Shown: positions 4,449-60,898 of the stretch, piece after piece | Position numbering within the stretch: the first letter of the stretch is position 1 | Layout: each line of letters opens with the position of its first letter | Source of the DNA: Glycera tridactyla | Lineage: Eukaryota | DNA: 64,000 bases | Reading direction: 5' to 3' | Assembly: GCA_965644265.1 (NCBI GenBank) | Contig: OZ286472.1 | Location: 51,336,001 to 51,400,000, forward strand | Made by a program: the position numbers and the translations under genes | The notes under the pieces: model-generated | What the model was told of the DNA's origin: nothing | What the model saw: only the letters and a program-made list of their open reading frames with translations | The model's database searches: none

Positions 4449-4609
4449 CAGTGAAACCTGCCACGAGAGACCACCTCTGATGAGAGACCACTTTTTCAGG
4501 GCAACCTTTTTATTTGCCACTTTCAAATATACCTCCGACGGGAGACTACTTCTTTTGAGAGACTGCTTTTGGTGACATGTAGGCAAGTCTCTTGCTGCAG
4601 GTTTCATTG
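4449..4609. mobile_element. MITE, CAGTGAAACCTG family, TA TSD
   Basis: ta|cagtgaaacctg ... caggtttcattg|ta; internal gagaccacctct motifs. Confidence 0.8.
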
Positions 4610-7600
4610 TACTGAATTTGATTGTGTTCTGTTGGGAACATTTCTGATCAATTTTTTTTGCTCTTCTTTCGTCAGAGTTTTGTTCAAATCTGACCCACAC
4701 TTTTTGCATTGAGCAGATCTTTTTGAAAACAAGTAAACTTGTGAGAAATGAGCCAATAAATACAAAGCAACCAAAACTATAAGGCTGGAAATACTCATGA
4801 ACAATGAGTGGCTACTTGAGACAGATTCTTGCTGTATACCTGGCATATTCAAGACAGAATCAACAACGCCCCAACCAAGAAGAACTTCTTTTGAGATAAC
4901 CTACTTTTTTCCCCAGCTCACAAGGAGTTCAGAATCAACTGGAGTACCAAGACTCTCGAGGAATGTGTTAGGATGTATGCTAGTCAGGCCAGTAGACACT
5001 TATATCTGAGAAGAAACAACCCGCCAACCAACACTACATAGCAACCAGCCTAAATAAAAATATTGGACCAAGATACATTCAGCTCTCATTGTATAAAAAT
5101 AACAAATCATCAGTGCTGTCCGTCAAAACGCAGAAACATAAATCTCTGGGAATATGTCGACATACAAGTATGCCTACTGGTTACATACTGATAGATAACC
5201 CAGTCGACTTTATACATAAATGAAACCAGCCAGGAGCAAGCACCATAAATCTAATAGGATTTGGTCTCTCACAACATGTGTGCTTGGTTGACACAGATAT
5301 ATCTGCAGAGGACTGACAGAAAAGGGTTCTGAAAAAATGCTCATTCACTGCATGTAAATCAGAGGCTAACAGCCTGGGCCCTCATTAATCCAAAGATCTG
5401 TGTTCTAGCACTCTCAGCCTACCTGTCGGCACAAATAACTCTCATCAATCATCCAAGCTTTGACTTCACCGATCACCAACTGTTGAGAAATGACAAAGTT
5501 CCTGCTCCCAACACCAATCCCAGTCGAAATGCCATCATCACAGCCAATCTCCGACATAGGGATTAAAAAAAATATTGGAATGATGCTAGGTGAAGTACAG
5601 AGCTCAATATCAACTGGAATAATTCCTGTAGTATCGGTCTAGGGTTTATCGATTGATTGATTGGTCGACCCAAAACGTGTATAGCAAATCTTTGAATGCT
5701 GATTTCTCTGTCTCCAGCAGACATGACTCCCTTAAAGCTGGAAGACAAAGCCACTCCTCACCCTTGCAGGGATTTTCTTACTTGGGAATATGTATGGGTC
5801 TTTCAATTACATTGATGCAGATTCCATGTGCCATTTTCGATTTGTGTGTGCCTCAAACCATGTAATCATATCAAAGTATGGAAAATTCCATGTGCTTTCT
5901 GGGCACAAGATATATGGTCTAATGTGCCCTTTCACAACTTTATGTGCCATTTAGCACAGGGCACAGTGTAAAATTATCCCTGCCCTTGGTAGCACGTCAG
6001 TAGTTAGTAGGCCATCCCCCAGACATTCAGTTTCTATTGGCCAAGGATATATTTGGCTATGGATTACTGTATATCACGTGACTGATAGTTCATAAATCAC
6101 AGAAACTCACATATGATATATATATATTTCAAATGCTTCGAAATGTGAAGTTGAGACCTCAACAATTTATTTATGAGGTGATTTACATTTGCAGCATGAT
6201 CTGGCAACTTTCAAGTTCGGTTCTCGCACCATGACCCAATCTTCACAAGGATACTGCAATTGCAAAAAATTTGGGTATCCATGTTCAAAAATGGGATGGG
6301 TGCAAAAGTAAGAACATGAACATTAAAAACTCCAAGTGATATTGGAGAGAGGTGGAGCCAAGGGAAGGTGGGGCCCATCTTCTAAGTTGCGGAGGCGATC
6401 CATCACCAGGGTATGCCACATGTTCCTACTTCAACCAACCACTTGATGTACAGATCTGCAAGTAACACCCAGAATAACCTAAAGCACATACCTCTTCTTT
6501 AAGTACAAAAAACTACACCTGTTTACAAATGTGGAATACTTTTTCTGTTGAGCATTGAAACCACGACATCCTTGGCGTCAGAGGGAGTGAACCTTTCCCT
6601 CATGCAGGGAGTGGCAATCTCTCACTATCACCACCTCAAAAAACCACTTGTTCCTATATAGTCCAGGACTCCATGCTAAAGTTTACAGCTTGCTTGAAAT
6701 GTTCTTTGAGATGTACTTGCCCGAACAGTAAATGTTTTTGCCTCACCTACATGGCGTCGCCATTCAGGCATGTAGGCATGGTGATCCAATGACACAAATT
6801 GTAGCCTTTTCCAACCACTGATGGTGAGCGTTGCAGAAAGTGAAACTCTCAATGCTATACAGTATTTGAATAATTATTTACAATGTGCTGAGACTGAAAT
6901 GCATTACGAATCACGAGATATCACTTCAGTAATGCCAGTGAGAATCAGATAATGCAAAATTTTCAGAAATATCCCACACTATATTCTCACAGAAGCTGTC
7001 TTCAAACTGCCAGATAACAGACCGTTACTGATCATAATTTCTCCATAAATACATTCAATGCCAAAAAGGAGTATACAATATTGAAACACTGGGTGCTGTC
7101 AAACAAGGCCACCTGTCTACAAAGGCCACTTTTTTTCTAATCATAGACAGGTTTGACTGTATACTTCAATACATTTTAGAACATTATCAGTGACACAGGT
7201 CCGCACTAACACATATCATTAGCCAGTTAGACAATAGCTGAAGCTTTTTCCATCGGTCTAAGAGAAATTGGAATAGCTACTTCAGCCAAATATGCTACAG
7301 GGAATTGCTCTATTGCTTATCTAGCAAGTCATATTTTATTTTCTGTCTGGAGGCAATGCTTTCTTTCAGATGCCTTCAGAACTGACCCAAGCTGGTAAAA
7401 ATGTGCAGAAATTGACCTTTTCAAAGTGTACTGACAGCCCATCAGTGGCCTTCATGGTGTAAGACAGGAAACACCGTTATGATTTTTAAGTGAACAAAAA
7501 CAATGCTATATGCCACAACCTGCCTAAAGAATAACAACAGCAGCATTTGGAAAGGAACTAAGATAACATTTAAGGCGAACCCAAGTACCAGCACCAACTT

Positions 7601-18952: not shown

Positions 18953-19643
18953 CAGTCAAACTTGCCTTAACGTGAACCTCCTCTAAGCGGGATCTTGTCC
19001 TAAGCGAACACTTTCAACTCCCCCCGACTATATTTTCACTATAAATCACCTGTTCTAAGCGTGAACCTGCCTTACGCGAATAGCGAATGACGATTTCAAC
19101 TCCCGCTGGACCCGTAAACTTGTATTAAACGTGACCTATCAGTGCAGGTTAGTCGCTATCGTATACATCTTTAATGCTGGAGGTGTGAAAGAACCATCAC
19201 AAATATCTGTCGCATTCACTGATTGGCCAAATTGCCGGAATCGCGGCGAAATCGACCAATCAGCGACCTGCTTTCATAGGGCTCTTGTCGCGAGATGTCA
19301 ACAATGTGCGCAGAAGACGATTTCCGAGCATCTGCGCAGGTTTCGGAACCACGAGGAAGCCGATCTTACAAATGAATTTATCACGTTTGAGGTGTTTTCC
19401 ATGGCGATTAGACGTATATATACGAGTATTTCCTCGATTTCGGTACGGACGGGTTGTTTTTCCACCGGAAAATGGCGGCACTCTCTCGGAAGTTACACTT
19501 GCTGTGTGTTTTCATCACGTTTATGGCGAAATCTTCTAAAAAATCGGTCTCAGGTATCGCCGAAATTGTACTAAGCGGGAACTTGTCCTAAGCGACATGT
19601 TTTGGTTCATCCCGTGGCCTCCCGCTTAGGACAAGTTTGACTG
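18953..19643. mobile_element. 691-bp non-autonomous pogo/Tigger-like element, TA TSD, CpG-rich core
   Basis: ta|cagtcaaacttg ... caagtttgactg|ta; subterminal ctaagcg repeats. Confidence 0.85.
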
Positions 19644-22600
19644 TAATGGTTGCCTTACTGCTTAGGATAAGCTAAAGTGTTGTTTAGGCAGGTGAAATTT
19701 GCCAGGATGGGGACTGCACTGCCCACCCTTCCAATAAGCGAAGGAAGGATATAGGGCAGAGCCAGAACTCATCAAATAAGTGAGATGAGAAGGCATATAA
19801 TCAGAATTGTACAGTGGTCCATGAGACAAGAGACCCGCTGACATGACCCCCTCTGCTCAGCAAGGACAGCTTTCTCATCTTACATGGTCAAACATACTTC
19901 CATAAAAGACCACCACTTTCTGGTGACATTTAGCATGGTCTCTCATCACAGGTTTTAACGTATTTATGTTGTGTTGGGATATGTTGGAGAGCCAGATCTA
20001 GTGAGACATATTGACTGTGGAATTAAAGCAATCTCCAGGACTCTACACCGCAACCAGTGAGTGGATAGCCAACATCTACCAAATTTACACTCTTGCTGCC
20101 ATATTTTGATAGTTATTAGCCATCCACCCCCAACATTTTGAGATTGTGTAAATGACAATGTATTGATTGGCTGCCAACATTTAGCAATGGTTACCAAAGA
20201 TGATCAACTTAGGGGCCCCTGAATATTATGACCAATATAGCGCCCTGCACCTACAAGATCACCAGTGATAAACCTCATCAGGGTTGGGATGGGTGGTTGA
20301 GGGTTAGCCTCATGCCAGGATATAGCCGAGGCACCACCCACATGACCCATGTACACAAATAAACAAACCCGGGAATCTGGTTCAACTTGTGTTCAGACAG
20401 CTATCATTTGAGACACGGCATCCCCGATATCTCACATGATGCTACTAGATCGGCTATCTTCCTCTCATCACAAATGTTACCAGAAGAATCAGCACTACAG
20501 ATCTGTGGCCAGTATTTCTGGTCCTTGTTGAACATATATTGTAGGCTGGATTAGCACCATCTATAATACCTCATGCATGGGTTCAGAGGCCAGAGAACAG
20601 CACCTTCTTTGAAGGCCACCTCCCTATAAAGACCATCTCTCTCTATGAAGGCCACTCTGAGCTGCAACCGTGATAGTATTTCCAACAATAAATGACCTCT
20701 CTATGAAGACCACCTCCATATAAAGGCCACTTTTTGATGCAATCAAAGGTGGTCTCTTCAGATAGGTTTGACTGTACTCATGACAGGTTTAACTGTATTT
20801 CAAGAGTTATCAGGTAACAGTTTAATCTACTCTGAGATGAGTATAGTAATGGCAAAAATTGTGGCAAAGCTGAATACCAAGAGAAGGTGCAGCGGATGGG
20901 AAGCTGTGGTGCAATAATATATGAATTTTCGTCTATGAATATCTGACACATTGGAAATCATTTTTTCAAGTTGGAGTACACTTTGCCTGCCTGACTACTG
21001 TCTACATCCAGACAGTTTTTACCATCACTTCAGTTGCCTCAACACCACTTATAGTATGATTACTGGATCGTTGATGATTGTCAATTACTAGTACTTCCTG
21101 GAGATGCTTCTTGAAGACGCTTCAAAACTGGAACCCATCTCACTACAAGTCTGAGTATACTACGGAAATGGCATGAAAGCTATAATTGCCATAGCAATCT
21201 ATGTCATTTAGTGCAGCTTCATCTTCAGTTCCCTTACACTTCAATGAAAAGCTCCCCAGTCACCTTCAGGGCTCTACAATGCTACTTTGTGTAACCAATG
21301 GCTAACAAATTTAACCTCTGGGTATCATCATTTGAAAGTTAGTAGCCAACAACCCCTGAGATTCTGAGAAGTTGTAATTGACCATGTACATGTATTTACA
21401 GTCTACATTTGGAAATGGCTACCAAAATATCAGCTTGAGGGCCAGCTGGCTCCTAAATATTTTGGCCAACATACACCTTTCTAAAACTGACTGATCCTTT
21501 GGTAAAGCAGCATTTCAAAATTGACATTCTTGCCCTCTCCTTCAGAAGATAATACCTGATCAAGACCACCTCTATCTTTCTGGTTAAGACTATGATTCAG
21601 TTGAGAAGTATCGCTGAAGAGGAGGATGGGCACTCACGAAAGATGGGCCCTCACAGTGAGCATGAGTGGAAACTTCATAAACAACTTTGATGCACTTGTT
21701 AGCAACTTAGCACTCAAATCAATTAAACCAGAAACTGACAATGAATCTGTTGGCACCGCAATCAAGCAAGAGGAATCCACTCAATCTGTGATGATAGGTG
21801 GGAGGGAGAGGAGGATGATGTGGGGGGAGAGAGGGGGGGGGGGCTGTAAACAAGTTGTTGATGGTCTGGAATCCAGCTGGGGTAAGCTGCTCTGGCAAAC
21901 AAGATGCAGCTGGCTAAGAATCTGCTTGCTGAAAAGATCCACAACCAAAGCATCACTTCTAATCAAGAGAGTTGGTGTCTTACTTTCTATAATTTCCTCA
22001 TACTTATGTATACTTCAGTACACCTTTAGCTAGCAGCAGCAAATCAATAGAAAATCAAAATTTCAGATCTTTTTTTTATCCCTCAGCCACAATTTGCATT
22101 TTCAACCCATCAATGTCTCATAGTATAGATCAGTTGGCCCAGTATTTCTTCCTCATCATTTATTGATGAATGGGAGAGGACCCATGATTTTGTGACATGG
22201 TCAATGGTATCTCAAGGACACGTGGGATACAGGGGCTCACTGACCTGTCAGAAGATCTTAAACTCTAAGAATTTCTTTGTTGTGATTACCCCATTGATAC
22301 ATCCAATAATAAAGTCCAATGCCTTGGTGATGTGCCCCAACCAAATAATCACAGGGTTCTGATAATCCCATGAGTGGGTATCGGCTTCTTGGGTAATATT
22401 AGGGCAAGTGACTGCTTTTGCATCTACTGGTGCACCGGGAGTGTGCGATCTGACACCCAGTCAGGTTGATTTTGACCTGAAGTAAGAGTGCTCTGTCCAT
22501 CCCCTAAACAGTACTTATAGCACTAACCCTTCTTATATTGCTGAGGTATGAGCTACCAATTTTAGCTATCAGAAGCCAGTGTCCCCTGTTCCAAGGGAGT

Positions 22601-24007
22601 TGTCCCTGATTTTGAAAGTAGAAGAGACAAATGTCCCCACTCAGTCAAGGGGTAATGGGTGATGCATTGCAGCCAGGGAGCAAGGTGTGAGTGAGTATAA
22701 AGGAAGGACAATATATAGGGTATAGAAACTTCCCACTGTCTAAATGGGTATCCCATTGACACCCCCATGTATCTCCTGGTACCCACATCACAATCATCGC
22801 CACTCCACCAAGTTCCTGACCTCACAAGTTCCTGACCTCATCTGACCTCATGTCATTCAACTGCTTGGCTTGAATCTCACCTTCAGTCTAGAACTGAGTA
22901 CCTTACAATACTCGACATATGTTCAGGTCATACAGGTGGATTCACATCTAAACAGCTCTACAATGAGTGATGAATTCAAGCATGTTCTTGTTATTCAGGA
23001 CAGTTCCAGAAGTGTTGCAGGGATCCACATTTTCCCAACTATCCTGCTACAGATCAAACACATTTTCAGACCATAACCATGTGAATAAGTATAATATACC
23101 CTATTCAAAACAAATGATTAGTGAATCTATTGGGTGGCAATTTATGTCACTCAAACATGCATTGCCAGGGTGATCAAAAACCTTATTGGCACAGTCCAGC
23201 ATAAAATATACAGTTTCAACCATAACATGAGTTTGTATGCCTATATTAGTCACTCATTTTTTTCCACCAGACATATCATCAAGCCGGTTTATATGAGAAT
23301 AGATTGATGGCTCAGCGCAATACTATAGACTGAGTGAAGAGTTAGCCTAGTATTGTGCTGAGCCATCGAGATGATGGCAAGTAAATGTGAAGCTATACTC
23401 ATGTCGCTATGATCAGAAGTGCACAAATAAATTAAGACGAATAAAAAGACGTGGAAAAAGTCAGTAAATGATGCAGTCATGCAGAGCAAAATATGCAATC
23501 ACCTTAAATGAATCGGTACATGATGAAGTGACATCCTCTTGTTCATTTAATGTTACATGTTTAACGTTATGATCGTTTTGCACCTGTCTACTGGGTAGGT
23601 GATACCTTTCTCTACCCGCCCAATGAGATAATTCACATAGCCAATTGTAGAGATTTAAATCTCATATTACTCATGAATCTTGACAAGGGTATCAACTTAC
23701 CACTCTTCAGGAGCAGAGATCGAGACACACCGAGGAATATAACACCCACCTGTAAATCACAGAAGCAGAGATAAGAGGTCAATAATTAATAAATTGAATC
23801 AGGTGTCCTCATAATATTCTCACTGTGGCATCACCATGATTGGGACAGATCTGACCAATCAGTCTGGCCTCTTCTCATCCTGCCATGGTTAGTGATTACC
23901 TGAAAATGTCCATCAGCTGGATGTGCCCTATCACAAATATTCTATTCCTATTTGAACCTTGGAACAGTAGGTCTGATTTTGTGAAGGTTCTTCATTCATT
24001 TGGAGTA

Positions 24008-29054: not shown

Positions 29055-29230
29055 CAGTCGAACCTCCCTATAAAGACCGCCTTCGGTTGCATCAAAACGT
29101 GGCCTTTATGGGGAGGTGGTCTTTATAGAGGTCATTTACTGTTGAAAATACTACCACGGTTGCAGTTCAGGGCGGTCTTTATAGGGAGGTGGTCTTTATA
29201 GAGAGGTGGTCTTTAGAGAAGGTTCGACTG
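29055..29230. mobile_element. MITE, CAGTCGAACC family, TA TSD, well preserved
   Basis: ta|cagtcgaacct ... aggttcgactg|ta (11-bp perfect TIR). Confidence 0.9.
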
Positions 29231-29867
29231 TAGTCTCATCAGAGATCTCTCAAAATGTGGTCTTACAATACAGGTGGTCTCTGGTTGGCAATATAGTTGA
29301 CTATGTCAAATACAAAAGGTGTTTCCAAATGATAAATCTCTAAATGAGAGTATGGTTCCACCTAATGCATAATTTTAATGAGTACCAACAAATTAAGTGC
29401 AAACAAAAATTCTAGTGAATTATATCCCTGGAAGACGTAATCAGTCTCTACAATGGCTAGCACAAACATATCATTTTCACGTTTTAAAAACCAGTCATCA
29501 AATATGCATGCAATTTATATTGGCAAGGGATACTTCATCATCGTGAATGCTACGCCGGATTCCTGGTGGAGCAACTATCATGACACGGTGTTGTACCGAA
29601 AATGGTTCAATCAAATATTTTTTGGCTGAACAAACACTGCTGAAAGATATCAGCGTTAATTAAGACCCTAAACAAAAACCAACATGCTCGGTTGATGGAA
29701 GACAGGTGAAGCAAAAATCTATGAGAAATCGATGAATGCCAGTCAGCAGGAAAGTTTTTCAGATCATTCCATATAGAAGAAAATAGAAACAAAAACATGG
29801 ATCAAGTCAGGACTTCAGAATTCAATTAACCCGATAGCAGGTTGCTGCCTAAAACAAGTGGATTATA

Positions 29868-41912: not shown

Positions 41913-42169
41913 TAGTGTGAGATTGCTATTCTTTATTGTGGAGTTTTCAAATCCCTTCGTTGGAATCTTACTAATAGAAAAAAATTCTGTCCCACCTATT
42001 TGAAGTGCAGCTAAACAATTCCTCCTGTTAGTAGCAAGAGCTGGCCAAAGACAGGTTTCCTTTTCGTGAATAACATATGGTACCAAATTAAATCATGCTT
42101 TATCAAATGACATTCTCTTAAAACAAGTGAATGCTCAAGTACAGGTGGTCGCTCAGGCAGTTTCAACTA

Positions 42170-42347
42170 CAGTCGAACCTCTTCTAAAGACCATCTCTCT
42201 ATAAAGACCACCTCACTATGAAGACCACCCTGAGCTGCAACTGTGGTAGCATTTTCAACAGTAAATGACTTCTCTATAAAGTCCACCTCCCACTGAAGGC
42301 CACATTTTGATGCCACTGAAGCTGGTCTTTATAGATAGGTTCGACTA
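42170..42347. mobile_element. MITE, CAGTCGAACC family, TA TSD
   Basis: ta|cagtcgaacct ... aggttcgacta|ta. Confidence 0.8.
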
Positions 42348-43186
42348 TATATACAACTATTCCTAGGAAGTATCGGTACAATAGGCATCCATATCTACTT
42401 CTCAACCCTCAACATCACACCCAGAATTTTATGGTATTTCCAAAGTCACTGTAAGCCCCAGACCATAAGATTTTCTGACAGGTGTGTTGGCCCCTGTGGC
42501 TCAACAAATAGAAACACCATGGGCCATATCTTTGAATAATGGGCCATCCATTTAGTTTTTTTCCAACATCATGTTAACAGGAATGGTAAATCTGGGCCTG
42601 TTCACCAATTGCAGGGGATAAGCAGAAATGGCTTTGATGATCTGAAGGTTTCTAGAGCATGCATGTAGGAGATAAACCAACTTCAATAGACAGCCCACCT
42701 CCAGTAGGGTTCAAGTGTCTACACTAAGCCCTGCCCCAATGGTACTAACAGGTAGATTCGCTGGTAAGGCGTTGTCCGTACACCTGCATAATGGGCAGGC
42801 CCATGATCCTGATTAAGTCACTAATTTATTGGGGGGGGGGGGGGGGGGGAGTAGTAGTGGAAATGCTGCGGTCAGGTGAAAAATAATTCCACCTGACAGA
42901 AGGGCAGGTGAAGTAGAAAGTCAATGTAAAGCCTTTGATTCCAGGATCAAACATCTGAAAAAGGAACCAACCACCTGCAAGAATAGAACAACCAGATGCA
43001 AACAGGAGGTGGGTGAATGAATATTTCAGTTTCCAACCCTTGTCATAACATACTAATGTCAAGCCCTGGCATCGTGTACAAGCTCCTTGATACTCTATAA
43101 GAAAAATTGGGCCCTACACCTACAGTCCTTACCAGTAGTGGATCAAGTTGCTTTCTAGAGGTTTTTGAACAAATACTGGGGCATCT

Positions 43187-43401: not shown

Positions 43402-44121
43402 CATCTGACAAAAATACTCCATTATCCAAATGAATCGATATTTTGGCATTCTCTCGGCAGATTGTTAGATATAAACCAGATGGCCCATCAACACCTGTAT
43501 ATCTAGTCTTTGACCCAAATATCAGAGCCACCTCAAATATAGATCATGCAAGTCCACTTCCTTCTATCGTTATGAATCCAGCCTTGAGTACAACAAAGGA
43601 TAGCATAATGCTAAGGGCTACTTAATTTCAAAAGAGCACACCAAATGGGAATGCTCACTCAAATTCCAGGTGCAGTGCACTTTTTGAACTGGGATAAAAA
43701 AAGTTCCCTGTGTGCAGCAGAGGGTTGCTTGCTGAGTCCCATGTTCAATGTGTTAGTAATGCCTTTGACCAAGTTTTTTCTCTCCAGACCAAATGATCTC
43801 TCCCAGGTAGAATGAGATTGACTAACGTTCAAACGAACATGCATTTATGGCATGAAACACAGCAATTGCAACGAATGGCAATCAATCATCCATCAACTCT
43901 GATCAGCCTCCTACCCCCCCCCCCCCCCCCCCATCTCACTGACACTGACAGCTCAGTTTGTTGATTGCAGTTGAGTTGAGCCAGCGCGCTACCGCACTTC
44001 CAATCCACGACTGTCAACAGTTGACATACAAATCCAAACAACATAATTACTCTAGAAGTGCCTCAATCTCGAAATTTGGACACTTTTTGCCCGGTACAAA
44101 CCCGCGATTGGTCGTTAAAAC

Positions 44122-44742
44122 TATTTGTGAAAGAAACGACTCTCAACACCAAAATTCAATTTCTGCTGTTTTAATAACAAAATAAGTAATCCCCCGGACT
44201 GCGACACCGGCTGTGGAGTCACAGGGAATCACCTAGTCTAACGAATACATGAATTCCCTAACCACCAAACAATAGATCTTCACTGAATGACCTTGACCTT
44301 GCTCACACCGGACATGTCACCAATTCCGCTATCAAGGTCACGGGACCCACGACCTTGACCAAGGTCATAGGTCAAGGTCACTCAGCAAATCATCTTCCCA
44401 TAGGGAACAACTCTGTGTCAATACTGAAATCATCATCAAAGATAACATTTAACAGCTTATACCAGACTCCTGTATCTCTTCAAGCATCTCTCTATCTACT
44501 AAACCTCTGCTCTCCAACTGCTGCCCATCTGACCACCTTCGTCAGAGGCCACCGTTGACGGCAGCCAACTCAGGAACAATGTGAACTGTTTAACATGAAC
44601 TGTAATGGTTTCCATGGCAACAATAAGACTTGACCTATATATAGCAGATAGACAAGACTCGATCAATCATAACACTGAGAAACAAATCTCATAATACCAA
44701 AATATATAGCATGTGGTGCCTAATTGTACACAATAGCGGCAA
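44122..44742 (-). repeat. Split direct repeat B2 (621 bp, element 3' end)
   Basis: Matches 45043-45663 at constant offset 921; no mismatches seen. Confidence 0.95.
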
Positions 44743-44782
44743 CCCCCTTTCATCTAAGACCGGAGGATGGGGAGGGAGGCGG

Positions 44783-45051
44783 AACTTTTTGTCAGGAGAA
44801 AACACACACACCACCAGCAGCACGCTAGGTGTAATATGGCGGAACGGCGCAGCACGCGCATGTGACGTCACAACGCTCCTGAAGAGCGTCCCGTAGGTGC
44901 GCCCGTCTGCTAGCGTCCTTTTCCAAATCATAGTGACTTACAAGATTCTCCTCCAAATTGCCTCATTTCCGCTTAGCCTCAACCCCACCCAGGTCTTCTT
45001 CTCATTCTCTCACAAATCCCAATCGCTGTCGCTGGATTGGGTTATTTGTGA
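44783..45051 (-). repeat. Split direct repeat A2 (269 bp)
   Basis: Matches 51200-51468 at constant offset 6417; no mismatches seen. Confidence 0.95.
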
Positions 45052-45663
45052 AAGAAACGACTCTCAACACCAAAATTCAATTTCTGCTGTTTTAATAACA
45101 AAATAAGTAATCCCCCGGACTGCGACACCGGCTGTGGAGTCACAGGGAATCACCTAGTCTAACGAATACATGAATTCCCTAACCACCAAACAATAGATCT
45201 TCACTGAATGACCTTGACCTTGCTCACACCGGACATGTCACCAATTCCGCTATCAAGGTCACGGGACCCACGACCTTGACCAAGGTCATAGGTCAAGGTC
45301 ACTCAGCAAATCATCTTCCCATAGGGAACAACTCTGTGTCAATACTGAAATCATCATCAAAGATAACATTTAACAGCTTATACCAGACTCCTGTATCTCT
45401 TCAAGCATCTCTCTATCTACTAAACCTCTGCTCTCCAACTGCTGCCCATCTGACCACCTTCGTCAGAGGCCACCGTTGACGGCAGCCAACTCAGGAACAA
45501 TGTGAACTGTTTAACATGAACTGTAATGGTTTCCATGGCAACAATAAGACTTGACCTATATATAGCAGATAGACAAGACTCGATCAATCATAACACTGAG
45601 AAACAAATCTCATAATACCAAAATATATAGCATGTGGTGCCTAATTGTACACAATAGCGGCAA
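45043..45663 (-). repeat. Split direct repeat B1 (621 bp)
   Basis: Matches 44122-44742; overlaps A2 by the 9-mer tatttgtga (45043-45051). Confidence 0.95.
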
Positions 45664-45722
45664 AAGACTGCACAGTCGCACCACTGCCTCACAACCAACC
45701 TCTCTTCCCCCCCCCCCCCCTT

Positions 45723-46692
45723 TTACATAGCAACCACACCATTCCTAATATATCTTTGAAACGCCCCGGACTTCCACCTTCCTTTCCTCTGGATATTCAC
45801 CACGGTCTCCCCCTCTTCGGCCCAATCGGTACACCTCCCAATCCTGAAGGAGTGAGTGTTGAAACACTTGGGGTCTAACCCACATCTCAAACAGGCCTGC
45901 TTGAGCATATACGCCACTCTAGGACGTGAAACAGGGAGACCACCCCCGTCCGTGAAGAGGTACCCAGGGGATGTCCCTCGAAAACCCAGGTAATGTGACA
46001 TGGCTCTAACAGGGCAAACCTCAATGAGACCTGGTGTAGTCTGAGGACATAATCTGAATTCGTACACTTCCTGAGGGTTGGAATTCGTTTTGAATGACGA
46101 AAAATGTACTTGGTAACCAATAACCGCCCTACCTTGGAGAAGGGACCCTACATTTTCCGCCCTTAAAGCATGGTCGGCAGAGCTAGAAGGGGCAATTTCA
46201 GATATACGTAGACAACCATGATAGGCCCAAGAGTACAACGCAGCCCACATGGCCCTGCCCCTTTCAGTCCCCACCAGCCCAGGAATGGCCCCCATAAGCA
46301 GCCTCAAGATGCTCCTTGTGATAGGCTTCCTATGGTCCCTTCTCTCTTCCAATCTATGAGCTCCTACCAACAACTTCCGAATCCTATAGTCTGCCGGGGG
46401 GGTCCCCCATGCCCCTAATTTTGAACCCATGAGACAAGGCAGTAGCCTGCGATCTCAGCGTGCTTGCCGCATACCCCACTTCCACCAGGGAAGCTAAATA
46501 CATAGCTACAAGTTCAGCCCAAGTACCATGTGCAACTTCAGATCCCAATGTCATACGGAATTTGTGGAAAGCTGACCACGTCCTATCATACATGGCGGCC
46601 GTGGACCCCGCGAAGGCTCTCGACTGCAAAATTCCTACCAGCTCGCTCAATCTGTTGGAATCAGGTCCGAGGGGATTGTCATGGGGCACCAT
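45723..46692 (-). CDS. Tyrosine recombinase (~322 aa if restored); one-base frameshift at C7 run 46396-46402
   Basis: N-part ...AFAGSTAAMYDRTWSAFHKF...STLRSQATALSH...GMGDPP; C-part ADYRIRKLLVG...HGCLRISEI...FKT...THSFRIG...GRWKSGAFQRYIR with R, K, HxxR, W, Y catalytic set. Start (MVPHD, 46692) inferred. Confidence 0.92.
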
Positions 46693-48215
46693 TCCAACCC
46701 TGCTGCCCAGAGCTCTGCCCGAGACACCTGAAAGCGTGATAATCTGTCTGCTAAAACATTGAGCACCCCAGGTATGTGTACCGCCCCAATATGAATGTTG
46801 TGCATAAGACAAGTAAGTACCAGTTTCCTCACCAGAGCCATAATCTGCTTGCACTTGGAAGTACGAGTTTGGAGAATTTTTACCACTGCCATGTTGTCCG
46901 AATGAATCAAAAGCGACCTGTGTTTCAGTGTGTCTATAGACGTCTGAACAGCAGTGACCACCGGGTACATCTCCAAGTAAGCAATACTATGACCGGACCA
47001 GGACACCGGGTATTTGAACTGGAACCAACTGTTACCGAGCACCCCGCCAGCCCCAACATGCGATGCATCAGTGTATAAATGTAGGGTCTCTGGGCTAGTG
47101 AGGGATCTCTGGTCAAAGAACGCCTTGCCATTAAAATTAAAGAGAAAATGATGCCAAAGGCGAAGGTCCTCTTTCATGTCCAAAGTAAGCCTAATGAAGT
47201 AAAATGGCTTGTCGACGCCGACTGTTGCGTCAATGAGGCGCCTAATGAACGGCCTGCCCGGCAGCACCACACCAGCTGCCCATTGCAGTTTTCCAATAAG
47301 GGAGGCCATCTCTGACAGTCGGCACGTGGATTTGGATAAGAGGTCCTCAACCAGTCCTGCATACTCTCTCAATTTTGGCACAGGCAAAGTGGCCAGAAAC
47401 TCTGTGGCTGACAATTCAACACCGAGAAACGTAAGAGACCTGGCCGGACCTTCCGTCTTCTCTGAGGACAATGGAACACCCAGCATGGCACACACTTTCT
47501 GAAATACCCTCATGGCATATAAACAATCCTCATATGTGGGCTCAATCAGTATGAAATCATCAAGATAGTGAACAATGCGCACAAGGCCAAACTTTTCTTG
47601 CAAGACCCAGTGTAGGGCCGTGGAGAAGGACTCAAAGATTTTACAAGCTGAGCTGCAGCCCATCGCCAGACAGCGATCTACGAAAAATTGACCACCAAAT
47701 TTGAAGCCCAGCAGATGATAATCGCTGGGGTGAATCGGCACTAGCCGGAATGCTGATTTGATGTCCAGCTTAGCCATGTACGCATTCCTCCCTATTTGCA
47801 AAATCATAGCTATGGCATCCTGCACACTGGCGTATTGCACAGAAGATGCCACAACTGGTATATTGTAATTCACTGCAGTATGGTCATAGGGGTGAGACAG
47901 ATTATGTAGTAATCGGAATTCCCCCGGTGTTTTCTTAGGTCTAATGGCCAGTGGTGACAACTGGAGAGGGGAAACTGGCGGGGAAGCAAACGGCCCCGCT
48001 ATTCTCCCAGCCAGCATGTCTTTCTCAATGAGTTTCCAAGTAGCAGCGGCATTCTGTCTTACGGAGGCTGAGTTAGAACAAGATTCACAAATGACATGAT
48101 CCTCACAGTTAATACTGAAACCATAACGAAAACCATTGACAACATACAACCTCCTCTGCTCATCATAGCCCACCAGCAACCGGTCTAATTCATTTGGAAG
48201 AATAGGAGTGGGCAT
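46647..48215 (-). CDS. pol: Reverse transcriptase + RNase H (522 aa from MPTP; frame open upstream to 48650, overlapping gag)
   Basis: KLDIKSAFRLVP, LAMGCSSACKIFE, HYLDDF (RT); LYTDAS, LEMYPV, HSDN, NVLADRLSR (RNase H). Confidence 0.96.
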   Translation of the reverse strand: MPTPILPNELDRLLVGYDEQRRLYVVNGFRYGFSINCEDHVICESCSNSASVRQNAAATWKLIEKDMLAGRIAGPFASPPVSPLQLSPLAIRPKKTPGEFRLLHNLSHPYDHTAVNYNIPVVASSVQYASVQDAIAMILQIGRNAYMAKLDIKSAFRLVPIHPSDYHLLGFKFGGQFFVDRCLAMGCSSACKIFESFSTALHWVLQEKFGLVRIVHYLDDFILIEPTYEDCLYAMRVFQKVCAMLGVPLSSEKTEGPARSLTFLGVELSATEFLATLPVPKLREYAGLVEDLLSKSTCRLSEMASLIGKLQWAAGVVLPGRPFIRRLIDATVGVDKPFYFIRLTLDMKEDLRLWHHFLFNFNGKAFFDQRSLTSPETLHLYTDASHVGAGGVLGNSWFQFKYPVSWSGHSIAYLEMYPVVTAVQTSIDTLKHRSLLIHSDNMAVVKILQTRTSKCKQIMALVRKLVLTCLMHNIHIGAVHIPGVLNVLADRLSRFQVSRAELWAAGLEWCPMTIPSDLIPTD

Positions 48216-49929
48216 CTGGCCTGGGACGGGAGTCATTAGATTCTCCCCGTGACCCTCCCCCAGAGGCGTTGCCGTTGGAATTGCCCTTGGGCTTCTTACC
48301 ATGTTTACACGTGTAGACCGGGTGCTGGCCATGCCCACATGGGCAGGTGTGTTTGTAGATACAATTGTCAAACTCACATCTTGTCCCCGGGGTGTGGAAG
48401 TCATAGCAGTATCCCTTCCCAACCTCTGGGGTAACACGAGACTTCGACTTGTTAGCGGAAGACTTACGAAATTCATTCGGCTTCTTGGTCTTAGCGCGTG
48501 CCGCCCTGTTGAACAGGTCCTGTCTGAATGTGGCCCAGGAATAGGGCTCCAACTTGTCCGCCACCATGGCAGCCCGGCCAGACCGGAAATGGTAGTCGTA
48601 GTATAAGAAGTTGAGCCCATCATCTGCCATTGACCTAATTTCTGCGGCATAAGCTACCATGTCAACAGTCTCGTGTTGTTTGGACTTATGAGGGTTAGAG
48701 ATATAAATCGACATATAGATATCAAAGGCGTTCGACCAGTCTTTGATTGCAGTAATCTCTTTCTTCTCCCTAGTGAACCCCAGACGACCCTTGGAAGGGT
48801 CCATGGACAGAAAGAATTCGGTATGGTTTTTAGGGTAGAGAAGTTCTACAAACTCGATCAATTTGTCTGCCCAAATTTCTTCTTTCTTTTCCAGAACAAT
48901 ATTGTACCCAATGGGCATACCCCCCGTGATAACCCTCCCGGGGGCGATCTGGTTGTCCTCGTCATGGATGGAGGCATTGAGCAAGGGCATAAACAAGGAG
49001 TTCTCTTCGAACTTGGAACTCGGCTTTGGAACATTCTCAGACTGTGTATGAGCAAGAGCCTCCTGTAAGTTAGCTAAAGTGACCCCAGGTTGACCCTTCC
49101 CCACATTCAAACCAGTAATAGGAACAACTTTCTCACCACTTGTTGACGTTGTTGTCTTCGTTGTAGGCATCGACGCCTGTACTTGGGAAACCGCTGGCGT
49201 CTCTGACCTCCCTTGCTGCGCAGATGTATGAACGGGAATATGCTGCCCGGGCAGAGTCGACAATCTTTGCTCAAGCGCCAACACCGTATTCGTCAACGAG
49301 CTGATCTGCATCTGAGTCTGTTGCAGGCACTGAGCCAATGTGTCTAAGTCCTGAGCACCCTTTGCACCGCTTATCACCCCACGATCACTAACGAAGCCTG
49401 TTGCTTGTGAACTTGACTGCAGTGCCATGACAGTAGGCCCAGACTGATCCAACGCAGGCTGCGCCGAACCCGGTCCGGGACCACGGTCAGACATAGAAGA
49501 CACCGATGCTAGCCCTCGCCTGTCAATCTTATATCGAGAATTAAACACGGGAAGCATACGCTCCTGAGATGTCACCTGCACCTTTTCCAATGTCAAATCC
49601 GTCTCCATATGAACGGGCGTGATGCTGTCACCGTGACCTGAAGTGCACGCGGCTATCTCCACATCTGTGGTAGGAGCAGTGGGCACCTGCGTCAGCGGAT
49701 ACTCCGCCTCCGGCTCACCCCCCTCCTCCAGCGACTCGTTGGGTGTGAATGTTGTTGTTCCGTCAACCCCGTCACACTCCGTCACACTGGCAGAGTCACT
49801 CTGACCCGTGCCATCATTCTGCAACAACTGGGCCATTTCTGCATATTCTTTCGCCTTGCGACTCTGCGTGATACGACGTTTCGGGCGCGCCCCAGCCGGG
49901 TCCTCGCCCTCGCGTTTCTGACCAACCAT
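48190..49929 (-). CDS. gag: Gag-like ORF (579 aa) with C-terminal Cys/His zinc knuckle
   Basis: WSNAFDIY, YYDYHFR, CYDFHTPGTRCEFDNCIYKHTCPCGHGQHPVYTC typical of DIRS/Ngaro ORF1; uninterrupted. Confidence 0.9.
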   Translation of the reverse strand: MVGQKREGEDPAGARPKRRITQSRKAKEYAEMAQLLQNDGTGQSDSASVTECDGVDGTTTFTPNESLEEGGEPEAEYPLTQVPTAPTTDVEIAACTSGHGDSITPVHMETDLTLEKVQVTSQERMLPVFNSRYKIDRRGLASVSSMSDRGPGPGSAQPALDQSGPTVMALQSSSQATGFVSDRGVISGAKGAQDLDTLAQCLQQTQMQISSLTNTVLALEQRLSTLPGQHIPVHTSAQQGRSETPAVSQVQASMPTTKTTTSTSGEKVVPITGLNVGKGQPGVTLANLQEALAHTQSENVPKPSSKFEENSLFMPLLNASIHDEDNQIAPGRVITGGMPIGYNIVLEKKEEIWADKLIEFVELLYPKNHTEFFLSMDPSKGRLGFTREKKEITAIKDWSNAFDIYMSIYISNPHKSKQHETVDMVAYAAEIRSMADDGLNFLYYDYHFRSGRAAMVADKLEPYSWATFRQDLFNRAARAKTKKPNEFRKSSANKSKSRVTPEVGKGYCYDFHTPGTRCEFDNCIYKHTCPCGHGQHPVYTCKHGKKPKGNSNGNASGGGSRGESNDSRPRPDAHSYSSK

Positions 49930-50373: not shown

Positions 50374-51183
50374 TTAAATTCCTCCGCATGCCTCATCACG
50401 TAAACGGTTGTATGCGGCATAAAACGCCTCTGTCCTGGCTAATTGAGGCACACTCGCAATTATTGCTGCACGCAACTCTCGTTGGTACTTCACGAAATAA
50501 TAGTCGTCGGGAAGGGGCACGCCTGTAGCTGTAGACCCCGGGTGCACGGAGTCCCCGGCATACTCCTCCACCTCCAACTTTTGGCCTCCTTTCCCATTCA
50601 TAAATCCTCGAACGTTGTAGAAGGAGACCCCTTCTTCGTATTGACACCCCGTCAGCACCGCCTCATTAAAGACCTGCATTCGGTCCTCGAACACGTCAGC
50701 CGCCAGTTTAGCCTTAAGAGATCGGTCCCCTCGCCTAATGCACGATAGCAGTGTGACTTGCCCAACCTTGGTGATGTCACGAACATGTCTCGCCATACCC
50801 AACAGGCTATCCGCCACATCCGCAGCATCAGCAAATTCACGTGAAATGTCATTCGTACCGATGTGAATGCATACAAGATCCGGTCTCCCCTGCCTGAGAG
50901 ATTCCAAAGCTGAAAGAGATTCTTTGCAGAGAACGGTAGGCGCGAACAGAAACTTGACAGACTCACATAGACGGTCCAAATTCAAGTAAGATGCGTACAA
51001 CTCTCCCTTGTCCATCCTACCCGATTGCAGGGCTCGACGATGTCCATCTCTGCGAGCCCTCCGCCAGAGCTCCCCCTCTAGCCGCCGCGGGAACGAGTGG
51101 CCAAGCACCACCACTTTGGCCTTCCTATTAAGCGGGACTCCAACTCCTCGCAAATCCCTGGCCTTCTTCCTACCACGAGGCAT
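50374..51183 (-). CDS. SGNH/GDSL hydrolase (esterase)-like ORF, 269 aa from MPRGRKK (in-frame ATG further up at 51348 inside A1)
   Basis: Block I VVVLGHSF, block III HIGTND, block V GDSVHP: putative Ser/Asp/His triad intact; uninterrupted. Confidence 0.85.
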   Translation of the reverse strand: MPRGRKKARDLRGVGVPLNRKAKVVVLGHSFPRRLEGELWRRARRDGHRRALQSGRMDKGELYASYLNLDRLCESVKFLFAPTVLCKESLSALESLRQGRPDLVCIHIGTNDISREFADAADVADSLLGMARHVRDITKVGQVTLLSCIRRGDRSLKAKLAADVFEDRMQVFNEAVLTGCQYEEGVSFYNVRGFMNGKGGQKLEVEEYAGDSVHPGSTATGVPLPDDYYFVKYQRELRAAIIASVPQLARTEAFYAAYNRLRDEACGGI

Positions 51184-51199
51184 CCCCACCGCAAGAGGA

Positions 51200-51468
51200 A
51201 ACTTTTTGTCAGGAGAAAACACACACACCACCAGCAGCACGCTAGGTGTAATATGGCGGAACGGCGCAGCACGCGCATGTGACGTCACAACGCTCCTGAA
51301 GAGCGTCCCGTAGGTGCGCCCGTCTGCTAGCGTCCTTTTCCAAATCATAGTGACTTACAAGATTCTCCTCCAAATTGCCTCATTTCCGCTTAGCCTCAAC
51401 CCCACCCAGGTCTTCTTCTCATTCTCTCACAAATCCCAATCGCTGTCGCTGGATTGGGTTATTTGTGA
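51200..51468 (-). repeat. Split direct repeat A1 (269 bp, element 5' end)
   Basis: Matches A2; contains terminal hairpin, TGTGACGTCACA palindrome (51278-51289, CRE-like) and AATATGGCGG (YY1-like, 51250-51259). Confidence 0.95.
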
Positions 51469-51521
51469 GGGCCAGACACACAGAATCCGGGACTGTCAAA
51501 ATACTGAAGTGAGATCCTCAC

Positions 51522-51693
51522 CTGATATACTTGTGTCTGCGAGGTCGCATTTTGCTGCAACTTTCGGGTACTCCTTCAGTTTTCTCTGCGCTAGGTTAAT
51601 CTCCCCTGTATATTGCGCCTCATCGAATAGTTTTTCTAATGTCCGTGATAAAGAGGTTGGGCTGAGACCGCCAGCACCAAATGCGGTCGCCAT
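51522..51693 (-). CDS. LRCH: Leucine-rich repeat and calponin homology domain protein, coding exon 1
   Basis: caaaATGG start; MATAFGAGGLSPTSLSRTLEKLFDEAQYTGEINLAQRKLKEYPKVAAKCDLADTSIS then G|GTGAGG phase-1 donor; resembles the LRCH N-terminus (LERALEEA...LNLSARKLKEFP...DLSDT) and its exon boundary before DLSxN. Confidence 0.85.
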
Positions 51694-53482: not shown

Positions 53483-54384
53483 CGAGCACGTGTGTGTGAC
53501 AGAGTGTGCAGTGTGTATTTGTACGGGGGGGGGGGGGGGGTAACAATCTTGTGATTTGCACAGAGTACCTCACCAGATTTTATGAGAAAAAATGTCACCG
53601 GGAATACCGCGACAATATTCTTTGCCAATCTCCCATTTGTTGTCCCGACTGCAATATGTATCAACTCTGCTCTGCCTCCTACCCCCCCCCCCACCCCTCA
53701 AGTTTGTAATCTAGATGTGACATTAACTGGGGATGTGGTCCCAAATTCCCTTTAGATCAAATCTGCGTCAGATCTGGCGACTGTACAATTGTATGGGCAA
53801 TCACATGGTCAGTGCGACGGCTTTTAGATTCACGTGACTGGACGAAATATGTGGAATAATATTTGGCAGGATCCCGCAACCAAAAAGTACCTGGAAAAAA
53901 CGATTGGATATTTAATTGTTCAACTCAGCATGGCCAAATAGTTCTTTTCTATGGCATGACATCTCAGAGCCAATTCGACCAAGATACTTGAAATCATGTA
54001 AAGTAGTGGTTGGATATGATCTCTGCACCAATTTTGATGATTTGGTATGAGTCAAGATCAAACATTCATACTGTTGTAATGGCTCAGATATTCTGTTCAT
54101 CGAAATGGTCTTCTCTCGACTGAGAAAATAACGAAGATCATCGGATCAGATGACTTACATATATCAGGTTTTTGTGAACCAATTTTTGAGGTTTCCCGCT
54201 GAACTGGTTGAAGCAGTTAAAAGCCCATGAACAAAAACCATGTTTCGAACAGGTACCATGGGTATCCCCGGGGGCTGTCCAGGTGGTTCCTATAGCTCCT
54301 TGGGTCAAAACAACGTCCACCTCGGACCAAAATTTATTTTTGGGAGACGTCATCTCCGTTGGATTATTATTACTACATCCAAGT

Positions 54385-60686: not shown

Positions 60687-60720
60687 GTGAGTCTGTTTAT
60701 ATATTTGCTATATCACTTTA

Positions 60721-60898
60721 CAGTCGACCCTGCTCTGAAGACCACTTCTCTATAGAGACCACCTCTCTATAAAGACCACCCTGAGCTGCGACCATGGTAG
60801 TATTTTCAACAGTAAGTGACCTCTCTAAAAAGACAACCTGCCTATAAAGACCACTTCTTGATGCGACCGAAGGCGGTCTTTATAGACAGGTTCGACTG
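60721..60898. mobile_element. MITE, CAGTCGAACC family, in TTC14 intron, TA TSD
   Basis: ta|cagtcgaccctg ... caggttcgactg|ta. Confidence 0.85.

What the first reader, a model, noticed from the sequence alone, without database searches (positions are those of the whole stretch)
44122..44130. 9-bp att-like core TATTTGTGA at both element ends and at the internal B1/A2 junction
The same 9-mer occurs at 44122-44130, 45043-45051 and 51460-51468. The internal copy shows it is element-encoded, so it is not a simple TSD. The inferred empty site ...gtcgttaaaac TATTTGTGA gggccagacac... shows the target carried it too. This is what YR crossover between a circle junction and a matching chromosomal core would leave. 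It implies more sequence-selective integration than the very short matches usually noted for DIRS-type elements.
Basis: partly seen in the sequence, partly recalled or inferred. Interest (0 to 1): 0.75.

Follow-up and report, generated by a model that had tools for sequence, protein, structure and literature searches.

The report
Retrotransposon end repeat, unusually long here
The 9-base repeat at both ends and at the inner junction of this young tyrosine-recombinase retrotransposon is real, but 16 sister copies in the same genome share only 0-5 bases there, so it is an unusually long case of the known short match at insertion sites and not a required 9-base attachment site.

Summary
Observation confirmed. 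TATTTGTGA sits at 44122, 45043 and 51460 (+). These are the left end, the internal B1/A2 junction and the right end of a 7.3-kb Ngaro-type (split-direct-repeat) tyrosine-recombinase retrotransposon whose sense strand is the minus strand.

Interpretation partly supported.
- I read both ends of 16 other family copies in the same genome. The bases shared by both ends and the junction number 0,0,0,0,1,1,2,2,3,3,3,3,3,4,4,5; only the window copy has 9.
- The exchange point is fixed. Every left end starts at TTTGTGA and every right end stops at ...(T/C)A.
- For 8 other copies I found paralogous or allelic empty sites. In all 8 the shared bases occur once in the empty site, with no duplication or deletion. 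So the crossover is conservative and the shared bases come from the target.
- A 9-base core is not required. This is the known NTT/ATT trinucleotide rule of DIRS-type elements, with a measurable preference for matches to the junction.
- The 9-mer is also the outer arm of a conserved junction hairpin.

Modest interest; new member of a known kind.

The parts
44122..44130 (+). 9-mer TATTTGTGA at the left end; it is the first 9 bases of repeat A1. The family-wide exchange point lies between 44123 and 44124 (A|TTTGTGA).
44122..44742 (+). Repeat A1, 621 bp, 100% identical to A2. In element sense (minus strand) this is the 3'-terminal repeat.
44743..44782 (+). 40-base unique spacer between A1 and B1.
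44783..45042 (+). Repeat B1, 260 bp, 100% identical to B2.
   Evidence: family D2
45043..45051 (+). 9-mer at the internal B1/A2 junction. This is the element's stored copy of the joined-ends (circle-junction) sequence.
45010..45051 (.). Conserved palindrome (hairpin) spanning the junction. Outer arms are TCACAAAT (45010-45017) and ATTTGTGA (45044-45051). Inner arms are CCCAATC (45018-45024) and GATTGGG (45035-45041). The loop is 10 bases and there is a 2-base bulge at 45042-45043.
   Evidence: DNA fold -13.8 kcal/mol (z -5.4); RNA fold of the sense strand -27.8 kcal/mol (z -5.9). One compensatory C-G to U-A change in the inner stem.
45043..45663 (+). Repeat A2.
45723..46430 (-). Catalytic (C-terminal) part of the tyrosine recombinase. 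The motifs LRISE, HSFR and RYIR (R...HxxR...Y) are present.
   Evidence: Pfam Phage_integrase E = 5.6e-4, below the cut-off
46384..46854 (-). Likely N-terminal part of the recombinase ORF, in a different reading frame. The gene is split by a frame change in the overlap 46384-46430. Assigned by position only; no Pfam hit.
46647..48650 (-). Reverse transcriptase / RNase H ORF.
   Evidence: RVT_1 E = 1e-14; RT_RNaseH E = 1.3e-3
48190..49929 (-). 579-aa ORF with no Pfam hit. Its position suggests gag, but this was not tested.
50374..51348 (-). ORF with an SGNH/GDSL hydrolase domain. It is the most 5' ORF in element sense.
   Evidence: Lipase_GDSL_2 E = 1.1e-8, above the cut-off
51200..51459 (+). 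Repeat B2.
51460..51468 (+). 9-mer at the right end. In the other 16 copies only the first 2-6 of these bases follow B2. Here all 9 do, so the full palindrome is rebuilt at this end.
51499..51693 (-). Host ORF that I read as exon 1 of a host gene (ATG at 51693, GT donor near 51522). The element lies about 50 bases into the following intron, in the same orientation. Read by eye; no gene model or family search was run.

Best explanation
The 9-mer is the element's own junction sequence. Bases 2-9 (ATTTGTGA) are the invariant start of repeat A and form the outer arm of a conserved hairpin at the B/A junction.

New copies enter the chromosome by a conservative exchange, with no target duplication or deletion, at one fixed point inside the 9-mer: TA|TTTGTGA. 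The tyrosine recombinase as catalyst and a joined-end intermediate are inferred. The target needs no 9-base match. It is an AT-rich site of the form W W | T W W T. In two of the three subfamilies it usually shares 2-5 bases with the junction (ATT, TTT, TAT, CAT, ATTT, ATTTG); in the third it shares none.

The bases that the target happens to share with the junction end up at both ends of the insert. The window copy landed in a site that matched all 9 bases, so the whole 9-mer flanks it.

Shown: the fixed exchange point, the conservative insertion, the target origin of the shared bases in 8 other copies, and the 0-5-base range.

Inferred: that the window's target carried the 9-mer, that the recombinase catalyses the step, and that longer matches are favoured.
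For: - Structure: A1-B1-A2-[YR, RT/RH, ORF, SGNH ORF on the minus strand]-B2, with 100% identical repeats.
- Seventeen copies were read at both ends. Overlaps are 9 (window) and 0,0,0,0,1,1,2,2,3,3,3,3,3,4,4,5.
- All 27 left ends keep TTTGTGA, slightly mutated in two old copies. All 17 right ends keep ...(T/C)A.
- Empty sites (shared bases in brackets):
  - C10_953 [ATTTG], 10 of 10 paralogs.
  - C11_548 [none], 8 of 8 paralogs exact.
  - C29_603 [ATT], a 544-bp, 100% identical empty copy 0.8 kb away.
  - C18_584 [TAT], C32_733 [ATTT], C7_761 [AT], C26_756 [none], C13_812 [ATTT against ACTT in paralogs, gapless].
- Preference for junction-like targets: random-site mean overlap is 0.80 and P(3 or more) = 0.071; observed is 9 of 16, p = 3e-7.
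- The first right-flank base is T in 13 of 17 (p = 4e-5). The last left-flank base is A or T in 26 of 27 (p = 5e-6).
- Literature: DIRS1-like elements begin and end with NTT, mostly ATT, equal to the 3-bp circle junction, and recombine with an identical 3 bp in the genome without duplication (PMC3266345). TTT ends are reported in Xenopus (PMC9210276). The same model is stated in PMC7192593.
Against: - The empty allele of the window copy itself was not seen.
- Even given a match of 3 or more bases, a 9-base match is rare by chance: 8e-4 per copy, about 1% for 12 copies. So either longer identity is favoured or this is a lucky draw, and one case cannot decide.
- Zero-overlap insertions are unusual for classical tyrosine recombinases, and no circle or recombinase activity was observed.
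Confidence: 0.75

Rival explanations
1. Strict att-like core. The recombinase needs a 9-base or near-9-base identical core in the chromosome, as lambda-type integrases do, so integration is far more selective than the usual trinucleotide.
For: The window copy has 9 of 9 at both ends and at the junction. ATTTGTGAA is invariant in the junctions of all subfamilies. A 9-base match is very unlikely at a random site (5.6e-5).
Against: Sixteen other copies share only 0-5 bases, including 6 of the window's own subfamily type (3,3,3,3,4,4). Empty sites of 8 copies confirm these short or absent matches. Three unoccupied 9-mer sites lie in this 64-kb window, which scales to tens of thousands genome-wide by my extrapolation, yet only 1 of 17 insertions uses one.
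Confidence: 0.03
2. Terminal redundancy made by the element, not carried by the target. A linear cDNA whose right end was copied a few bases too far across the internal B1/A2 junction (or a circle opened by staggered cuts and filled in) was joined to a chromosome break. The empty site would then read aaaac-gggcc.
For: Right ends vary in how far they run into the 9-mer, from position 2 to 6 and to 9 here. Linear single-stranded cDNA intermediates are reported for DIRS-1 (PMC7192593). The window's empty site is unseen.
Against: In all 8 copies where the empty site can be read, the variable bases are present in the target and nothing is duplicated. The element ends are never nibbled and the flanks are never deleted, unlike end joining.
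Confidence: 0.07
3. Insertion into a relic of an older element's junction. This would be homologous targeting of pre-existing family sequence, as noted for DIRS-1 in Dictyostelium.
For: A GATTGG motif lies 10 bases left of the 9-mer in the flank, as it does next to it in the junction. A C1 copy shows three A-repeat starts about 870 bp apart, which suggests a tandem A-B-A-B-A array that could arise by element-into-element events.
Against: Local alignment of 80-base flanks against the B end and the A start is no better than shuffled sequence (p = 0.30-0.40). The flanks are single-copy and lie beside what I read as a host exon.
Confidence: 0.03
4. Pure coincidence on top of the ordinary 3-5-base match. 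The four extra right-flank bases GTGA and the left TA matched by luck, with no preference for longer identity.
For: Only one such case exists among 17. The finding was chosen for follow-up because it looked striking, so selection inflates its apparent rarity. One other copy reaches 5.
Against: P(9 or more | 3 or more) = 8e-4 per copy, about 1% for the 12 copies of the two match-using subfamilies. The family demonstrably prefers junction-like targets (p = 3e-7).
Confidence: 0.12

Closest known systems
Ngaro-type tyrosine-recombinase retrotransposons (split direct repeats A1-[ORFs]-B1A2B2; Goodwin and Poulter 2004, as described in PMC9210276, PMC8547959 and PMC4157794)
   Same: Split direct repeats with an internal junction next to the 3' repeat. 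RT/RNase H followed by a tyrosine recombinase. No methyltransferase domain found. An SGNH hydrolase ORF, as in amphibian Ngaro (PMC9210276). Isolated A-B remnants, as in Cafeteria (PMC8547959).
   Different: The SGNH ORF is at the 5' side here instead of after the recombinase. A 40-base spacer separates two of the 3' repeats. RT/YR phylogeny was not done, so placement inside Ngaro rests on structure.
DIRS1-like circle-junction trinucleotide rule (elements begin and end with NTT, mostly ATT; recombination with an identical 3 bp in the genome, no TSD; PMC3266345, PMC7192593, PMC9210276)
   Same: A short T-rich motif (ATT, TTT, TAT, CAT) is shared by both ends and the internal junction. There is no target duplication. 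The shared bases are contributed once by the target, shown here with empty sites.
   Different: The match length is variable (0-5, once 9) rather than a fixed 3. One subfamily uses none. The terminal repeats are direct, not inverted with an ICR.
Crypton DNA transposons (tyrosine recombinase; short 4-6-bp direct repeats that reflect microhomology with the target, not true TSDs; PMC13465315)
   Same: Flanking short direct repeats arise from identity between the element junction and the target.
   Different: Cryptons have no reverse transcriptase and no internal stored junction.
Classical att core sites of lambda-type integrases, and loxP/FRT
   Same: A recombinase of the same superfamily. An element-borne site with inverted-repeat arms. 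The shared core ends up on both sides of the insert.
   Different: Those systems need identity across a 6-8-bp overlap. Here the exchange point is a single fixed position and the target identity can be zero.
Folded single-strand recombination sites (integron attC, CTX phage attP(+))
   Same: This is a functional analogy only. The shared features are a hairpin-forming site with bulged bases next to the exchange point, one fixed exchange position, and minimal target sequence (G|TT in integrons, A|TT here).
   Different: There is no evidence here that a single strand is the substrate. These are bacterial systems with no sequence relationship tested.

Membership tests
Ngaro-type YR retrotransposon (DIRS order) | Split direct repeats A1-[ORFs]-B1-A2-B2 with A1=A2 and B1=B2 | tested here: met
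   In element sense (minus strand): the 260-bp repeat, the ORFs, the 621-bp repeat, the 260-bp repeat, a 40-base spacer, then the 621-bp repeat. Both pairs are 100% identical. The same layout is seen in sister copies.
Ngaro-type YR retrotransposon (DIRS order) | Reverse transcriptase / RNase H ORF | tested here: met
   RVT_1 E = 1e-14 (above the cut-off). RT_RNaseH E = 1.3e-3 (below the cut-off).
Ngaro-type YR retrotransposon (DIRS order) | Tyrosine recombinase instead of a DDE integrase, with the R...HxxR...Y catalytic residues | tested here: met
   LRISE, HSFR and RYIR motifs in 45723-46430 (minus strand). Pfam Phage_integrase E = 5.6e-4, below the gathering score. The gene is split between two frames in this copy.
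Ngaro-type YR retrotransposon (DIRS order) | No methyltransferase domain (distinguishes Ngaro from DIRS1-like and PAT-like) | tested here: met
   no MT family among the Pfam hits of the five ORFs. An absence by Pfam scan only.
Ngaro-type YR retrotransposon (DIRS order) | RT and YR sequences fall inside the Ngaro clade | not tested
   No phylogeny was run. The large protein searches were spared.
DIRS-type junction/trinucleotide integration | A short motif shared by both termini and the internal junction | tested here: met
   12 of 16 other copies share 1-5 bases, mostly ATT, TTT, TAT or CAT.
DIRS-type junction/trinucleotide integration | No target-site duplication; the shared motif is present once in the empty site | tested here: met
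   8 of 8 copies with paralogous or allelic empty sites.
DIRS-type junction/trinucleotide integration | A circular (joined-end) DNA intermediate recombined by the element's YR | not testable with these tools
   Needs inverse PCR or read data. No sequencing run was listed.
Sequence-specific att site with an extended identical core (7 bp or more) | The same extended core is present in the target of every insertion | tested here: not met
   Overlaps are 0-5 in 16 other copies. Empty sites without any match: C11_548 in 8 of 8 paralogs, and C26_756.

The most novel reading that the evidence does not exclude
The conserved junction hairpin that contains the 9-mer is itself the recombination substrate, folded from single-stranded cDNA as in integron attC or CTX phage, or bound as a duplex arm. 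The recombinase makes one strand exchange at A|TTT, and replication resolves it.

This would explain three things: the single fixed exchange point (17 of 17 copies), the absence of the two product classes expected from a 6-8-bp heteroduplex overlap, and insertions with zero homology. Targets that carry the recombinase-binding arm TTTGTGA, such as the window's site, would be strongly favoured pseudo-sites.
Probability: 0.12. Interest if true: 0.65.

Novelty: new member of a known kind. Interest (0 to 1): 0.3.

Why it matters
How tyrosine-recombinase retrotransposons choose and enter their targets has hardly been tested. The published model rests mainly on trinucleotides seen at element ends, and PMC7192593 states that the recombinase specificity has not been studied experimentally.

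This family gives a small but clean natural data set of 17 insertions with both ends read and 8 with empty sites. It shows four things:
- The insertion is conservative.
- The exchange point is fixed to one phosphodiester position.
- Target identity ranges from 0 to 9 bases and is preferred, not required.
- The junction carries a conserved hairpin.

The data set corrects the idea of a 9-base att site. It leaves one testable question, whether longer identity or a recombinase-binding arm raises integration efficiency. Practically, it gives exact end definitions for annotating this family.

Tried and rejected
1. Empty allele of the window copy.
- The left and right 300-base flanks are single-copy in the assembly, so there is no paralogous site.
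- The look-up of sequencing runs listed no run.
- No relatives of this genome are held.

I switched to pieces of 86-161 bases. As a result, the internal structure of several A-only copies, and of the apparent A-internal-B forms, was not read.

3. Target as a relic junction: rejected (p = 0.30-0.40).

4. Templated terminal redundancy as the general source of the shared bases: rejected for the family by 8 of 8 empty sites.

5. An unbiased heteroduplex across a 6-8-bp overlap predicts two classes of apparent ends. Only one class is seen, 17 to 0.

6. Left flanks of C32_733 and C18_584 gave repeats that stop short of the insertion point in the genome search. Spanning paralogs were then found among loci already fetched.

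7. RNAalifold on 11 junctions recovered only the inner stem. The outer stem is invariant and is offset by one base in one subfamily, so covariation cannot support it.

The only joins made in scripts were of host flanks (pseudo-empty sites).

Full report
**1. The observation**

TATTTGTGA is found on the + strand at 44122-44130, 45043-45051 and 51460-51468. There are three further copies on the minus strand in unrelated sequence. The total is 6 matches against 1.1 expected, and none of 100 shuffles reach 6 (sequences read).

The repeat finder and a pairwise alignment give this layout on the + strand:
- A1, 44122-44742
- a 40-base spacer
- B1, 44783-45042
- A2, 45043-45663
- the internal region
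- B2, 51200-51459
- the 9-mer

A1/A2 (621 bp) and B1/B2 (260 bp) are 100% identical. The first two 9-mers are therefore one fact, the start of repeat A. The independent fact is that the 9 bases after B2 repeat the 9 bases after B1.

**2. What the element is**

The ORFs lie on the minus strand. In element sense the order is:
- an SGNH/GDSL-hydrolase ORF (50374-51348, Pfam E = 1.1e-8)
- a 579-aa ORF without a Pfam hit
- RT/RNase H (46647-48650, RVT_1 E = 1e-14)
- a tyrosine recombinase (45723-46430)

The recombinase carries the motifs LRISE, HSFR and RYIR, which give the R...HxxR...Y signature. What I take to be its N-terminal part lies in another frame, so the gene is split in this copy. No methyltransferase domain was found.

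In element sense the repeats read A1-[ORFs]-B1-A2-B2. That is the split-direct-repeat layout that defines Ngaro-type elements (PMC9210276, PMC8547959, PMC4157794). The window is one 64-kb piece of a 2.04-Gb assembly.

**3. Sister copies**

A 300-base query across the junction, and two subfamily queries, found about 25-30 copies in the genome at 74-95% identity. None is a close sibling of the window copy.

I number the junction 9-mer T1 A2 T3 T4 T5 G6 T7 G8 A9. In one subfamily position 1 is C.
- Every internal junction reads ...GATTGG-xx-(T/C)ATTTGTGA-A....
- All 27 left ends keep T3-A9, slightly mutated in two old copies.
- The base before T3 is A in 15 copies, T in 11 and C in 1.
- All 17 right ends keep positions 1-2, then run a variable distance into the 9-mer.

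The number of bases shared by both ends and the junction, per copy:

| Shared bases | Copies |
|---|---|
| 9 | window |
| 5 | C10_953 |
| 4 | C13_812, C32_733 |
| 3 | C26_193, C29_603, C18_584, C26_541, C32_273 |
| 2 | C4_960, C7_761 |
| 1 | C11_457, C42_642 |
| 0 | C11_548, C26_756, C31_887, C1_461 |

That is essentially met: the range is 0-5 and the median is 2.5.

**4. Where the shared bases come from**

Several copies sit inside dispersed or local repeats, so paralogous empty sites exist.
- **C10_953:** ten of ten paralogs read ...gatgtgt-ATTTG-acttgaat..., with a single ATTTG.
- **C11_548** (no shared base): eight of eight paralogs, 97-99% identical, read left flank directly followed by right flank.
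- **C29_603:** a 544-bp, 100% identical copy of 39 bases of left flank plus 505 bases of right flank lies 0.8 kb from the element. It carries a single ATT. It may be the empty haplotype.
- **C18_584** (TAT), **C32_733** (ATTT), **C7_761** (AT), **C26_756** (none) and **C13_812** (ATTT, where paralogs read ACTT) all align across the insertion point without a gap.

So in 8 of 8 cases insertion is conservative. Nothing is duplicated or lost, and the shared bases were in the target. It rejects, for the family, the rival that the shared bases are a terminal redundancy made by the element.

**5. How selective the integration is**

At random sites of the window the expected overlap is 0.80. P(3 or more) is 0.071 and P(9 or more) is 5.6e-5.

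Nine of the 16 other copies have 3 or more shared bases (p = 3e-7). All nine belong to two subfamilies. The third subfamily, whose A repeat starts ...aagaaagg, has 0-1 shared bases. The inferred targets give an AT-rich pattern W W | T W W T and no more.

So there is a preference for targets that resemble the T-rich part of the junction, but there is no requirement. Three unoccupied 9-mers lie in this window alone.

The window copy is an outlier. Given a match of 3 or more bases, a match of 9 or more has probability 8e-4 per copy, or about 1% over 12 copies. Either longer identity (or the TTTGTGA arm) is favoured, or this is a lucky draw that was noticed because it is striking. One case cannot decide.

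**6. The fixed exchange point**

If the recombinase cut both partners 6-8 bases apart and the overlap differed, replication would give two classes of products with ends shifted by the overlap length. Only one class is seen, 17 of 17 (inference). The data fit an exchange at a single position, A2|T3. I cannot say how this is achieved.

**7. The junction hairpin**

The 9-mer is part of a palindrome: TCACAAAT-CCCAATC-(10 bases)-GATTGGG-TT-ATTTGTGA, at 45010-45051.
- It folds strongly as DNA (-13.8 kcal/mol, z -5.4) and as sense-strand RNA (-27.8 kcal/mol, z -5.9).
- The inner stem shows a compensatory change in C7_761. A second one is seen at the right end of the C1 copy.
- ATTTGTGAA and CACAAA are invariant in 11 junctions that are otherwise 74-95% identical.

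The full hairpin exists only at the internal junction and at joined ends, and by accident at the window copy's right end. Its role is open. It could be a recombinase site. It could pair the two ends during junction formation. It could be a priming hairpin of the kind that PMC7192593 reports Poulter and Goodwin noting for DIRS-1. Either of the last two roles would explain the conservation of the 9-mer without any role in target choice.

**8. Comparison with what is known**

DIRS1-like elements begin and end with NTT, most often ATT, equal to a 3-bp circle junction. They are thought to recombine with an identical 3 bp in the genome without duplication (PMC3266345). Xenopus DIRS-like families have TTT (PMC9210276). 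PMC7192593 restates the model and notes that the specificity is untested. Crypton flanking repeats of 4-6 bp are likewise read as microhomology (PMC13465315).

This family behaves the same way. A search of the held library found no paper that links these retrotransposons to folded single-strand sites. That reading is speculative.

**9. What could not be done**

- The window copy's empty allele was not obtained.

**10. Verdict**

The claim of a 9-base att-like requirement is not supported.

This is an ordinary Ngaro-type insertion with an unusually long target match. Interest is modest. The most novel reading still open is that the junction hairpin or arm is the recombinase's substrate and makes 9-mer sites favoured pseudo-sites.

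Noticed in passing
L031 (G000:C29:60362500-60371500), in element orientation 4584-5127 versus the right flank at 3802-4306: A 544-bp, 100% identical copy of the C29 insertion's empty site (39 bases of left flank plus 505 bases of right flank) lies 0.8 kb from the element. It could be the empty haplotype folded into the assembly, which would make the insertion heterozygous, or it could be a local duplication.
   Followed up: partly
G000:C32:73303609-73304540 (L014); G000:C10:95391240-95397645; G000:C11:45738980-45745410; G000:C1:46106225-46108106: Variant forms of the family. C32 is a solo A-B remnant flanked by host DNA. The C10 and C11 copies appear to be A-internal-B without the internal B1-A2 pair. 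The C1 copy has three A starts about 870 bp apart, which suggests a tandem A-B-A-B-A array. The last two forms are inferred from hit coordinates only.
   Followed up: partly
window 60719-60898, 29055-29232, 20613-20774, 42165-42346: Four copies of a roughly 190-base high-copy dispersed repeat (thousands of candidates genome-wide). It is the same family into which the C13 Ngaro copy inserted. Probably a SINE or MITE-like element; not classified.
   Followed up: no
window 51499-51693 (-), donor near 51522; element right end at 51468: What I read as exon 1 of a host gene (ATG, 57 codons, GT donor) ends about 50 bases from the element. The element then lies in intron 1 in the same orientation.
   Followed up: partly
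window 46384-46430 (-): The recombinase gene is split. The likely N-terminal part (46384-46854) and the catalytic part (45723-46430) overlap by 47 bases in different frames. I did not check whether sister copies share this.
   Followed up: no
window 42830-42849, 43914-43933, 45707-45720, 53523-53538, 53676-53690: Long G or C homopolymer runs (14-20 bases), several preceded by the same CTCCTAC motif (families D4 and D7). One lies inside the element just downstream of the recombinase gene. Origin unknown.
   Followed up: no
window 341-349, 19197-19205, 23931-23939 (-): Three unoccupied TATTTGTGA sites in unrelated sequence. This is somewhat more than the roughly one expected by chance. No element sequence lies next to them.
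   Followed up: yes
window 44743-44782 versus 45664-45720: After the 621-bp repeat, A1 continues with a 40-base spacer while A2 continues with about 57 different bases ending in a C14 run. The two share only a CCCCC-TTT stretch, so the inner boundary of repeat A may have been reshaped by a deletion.
   Followed up: no
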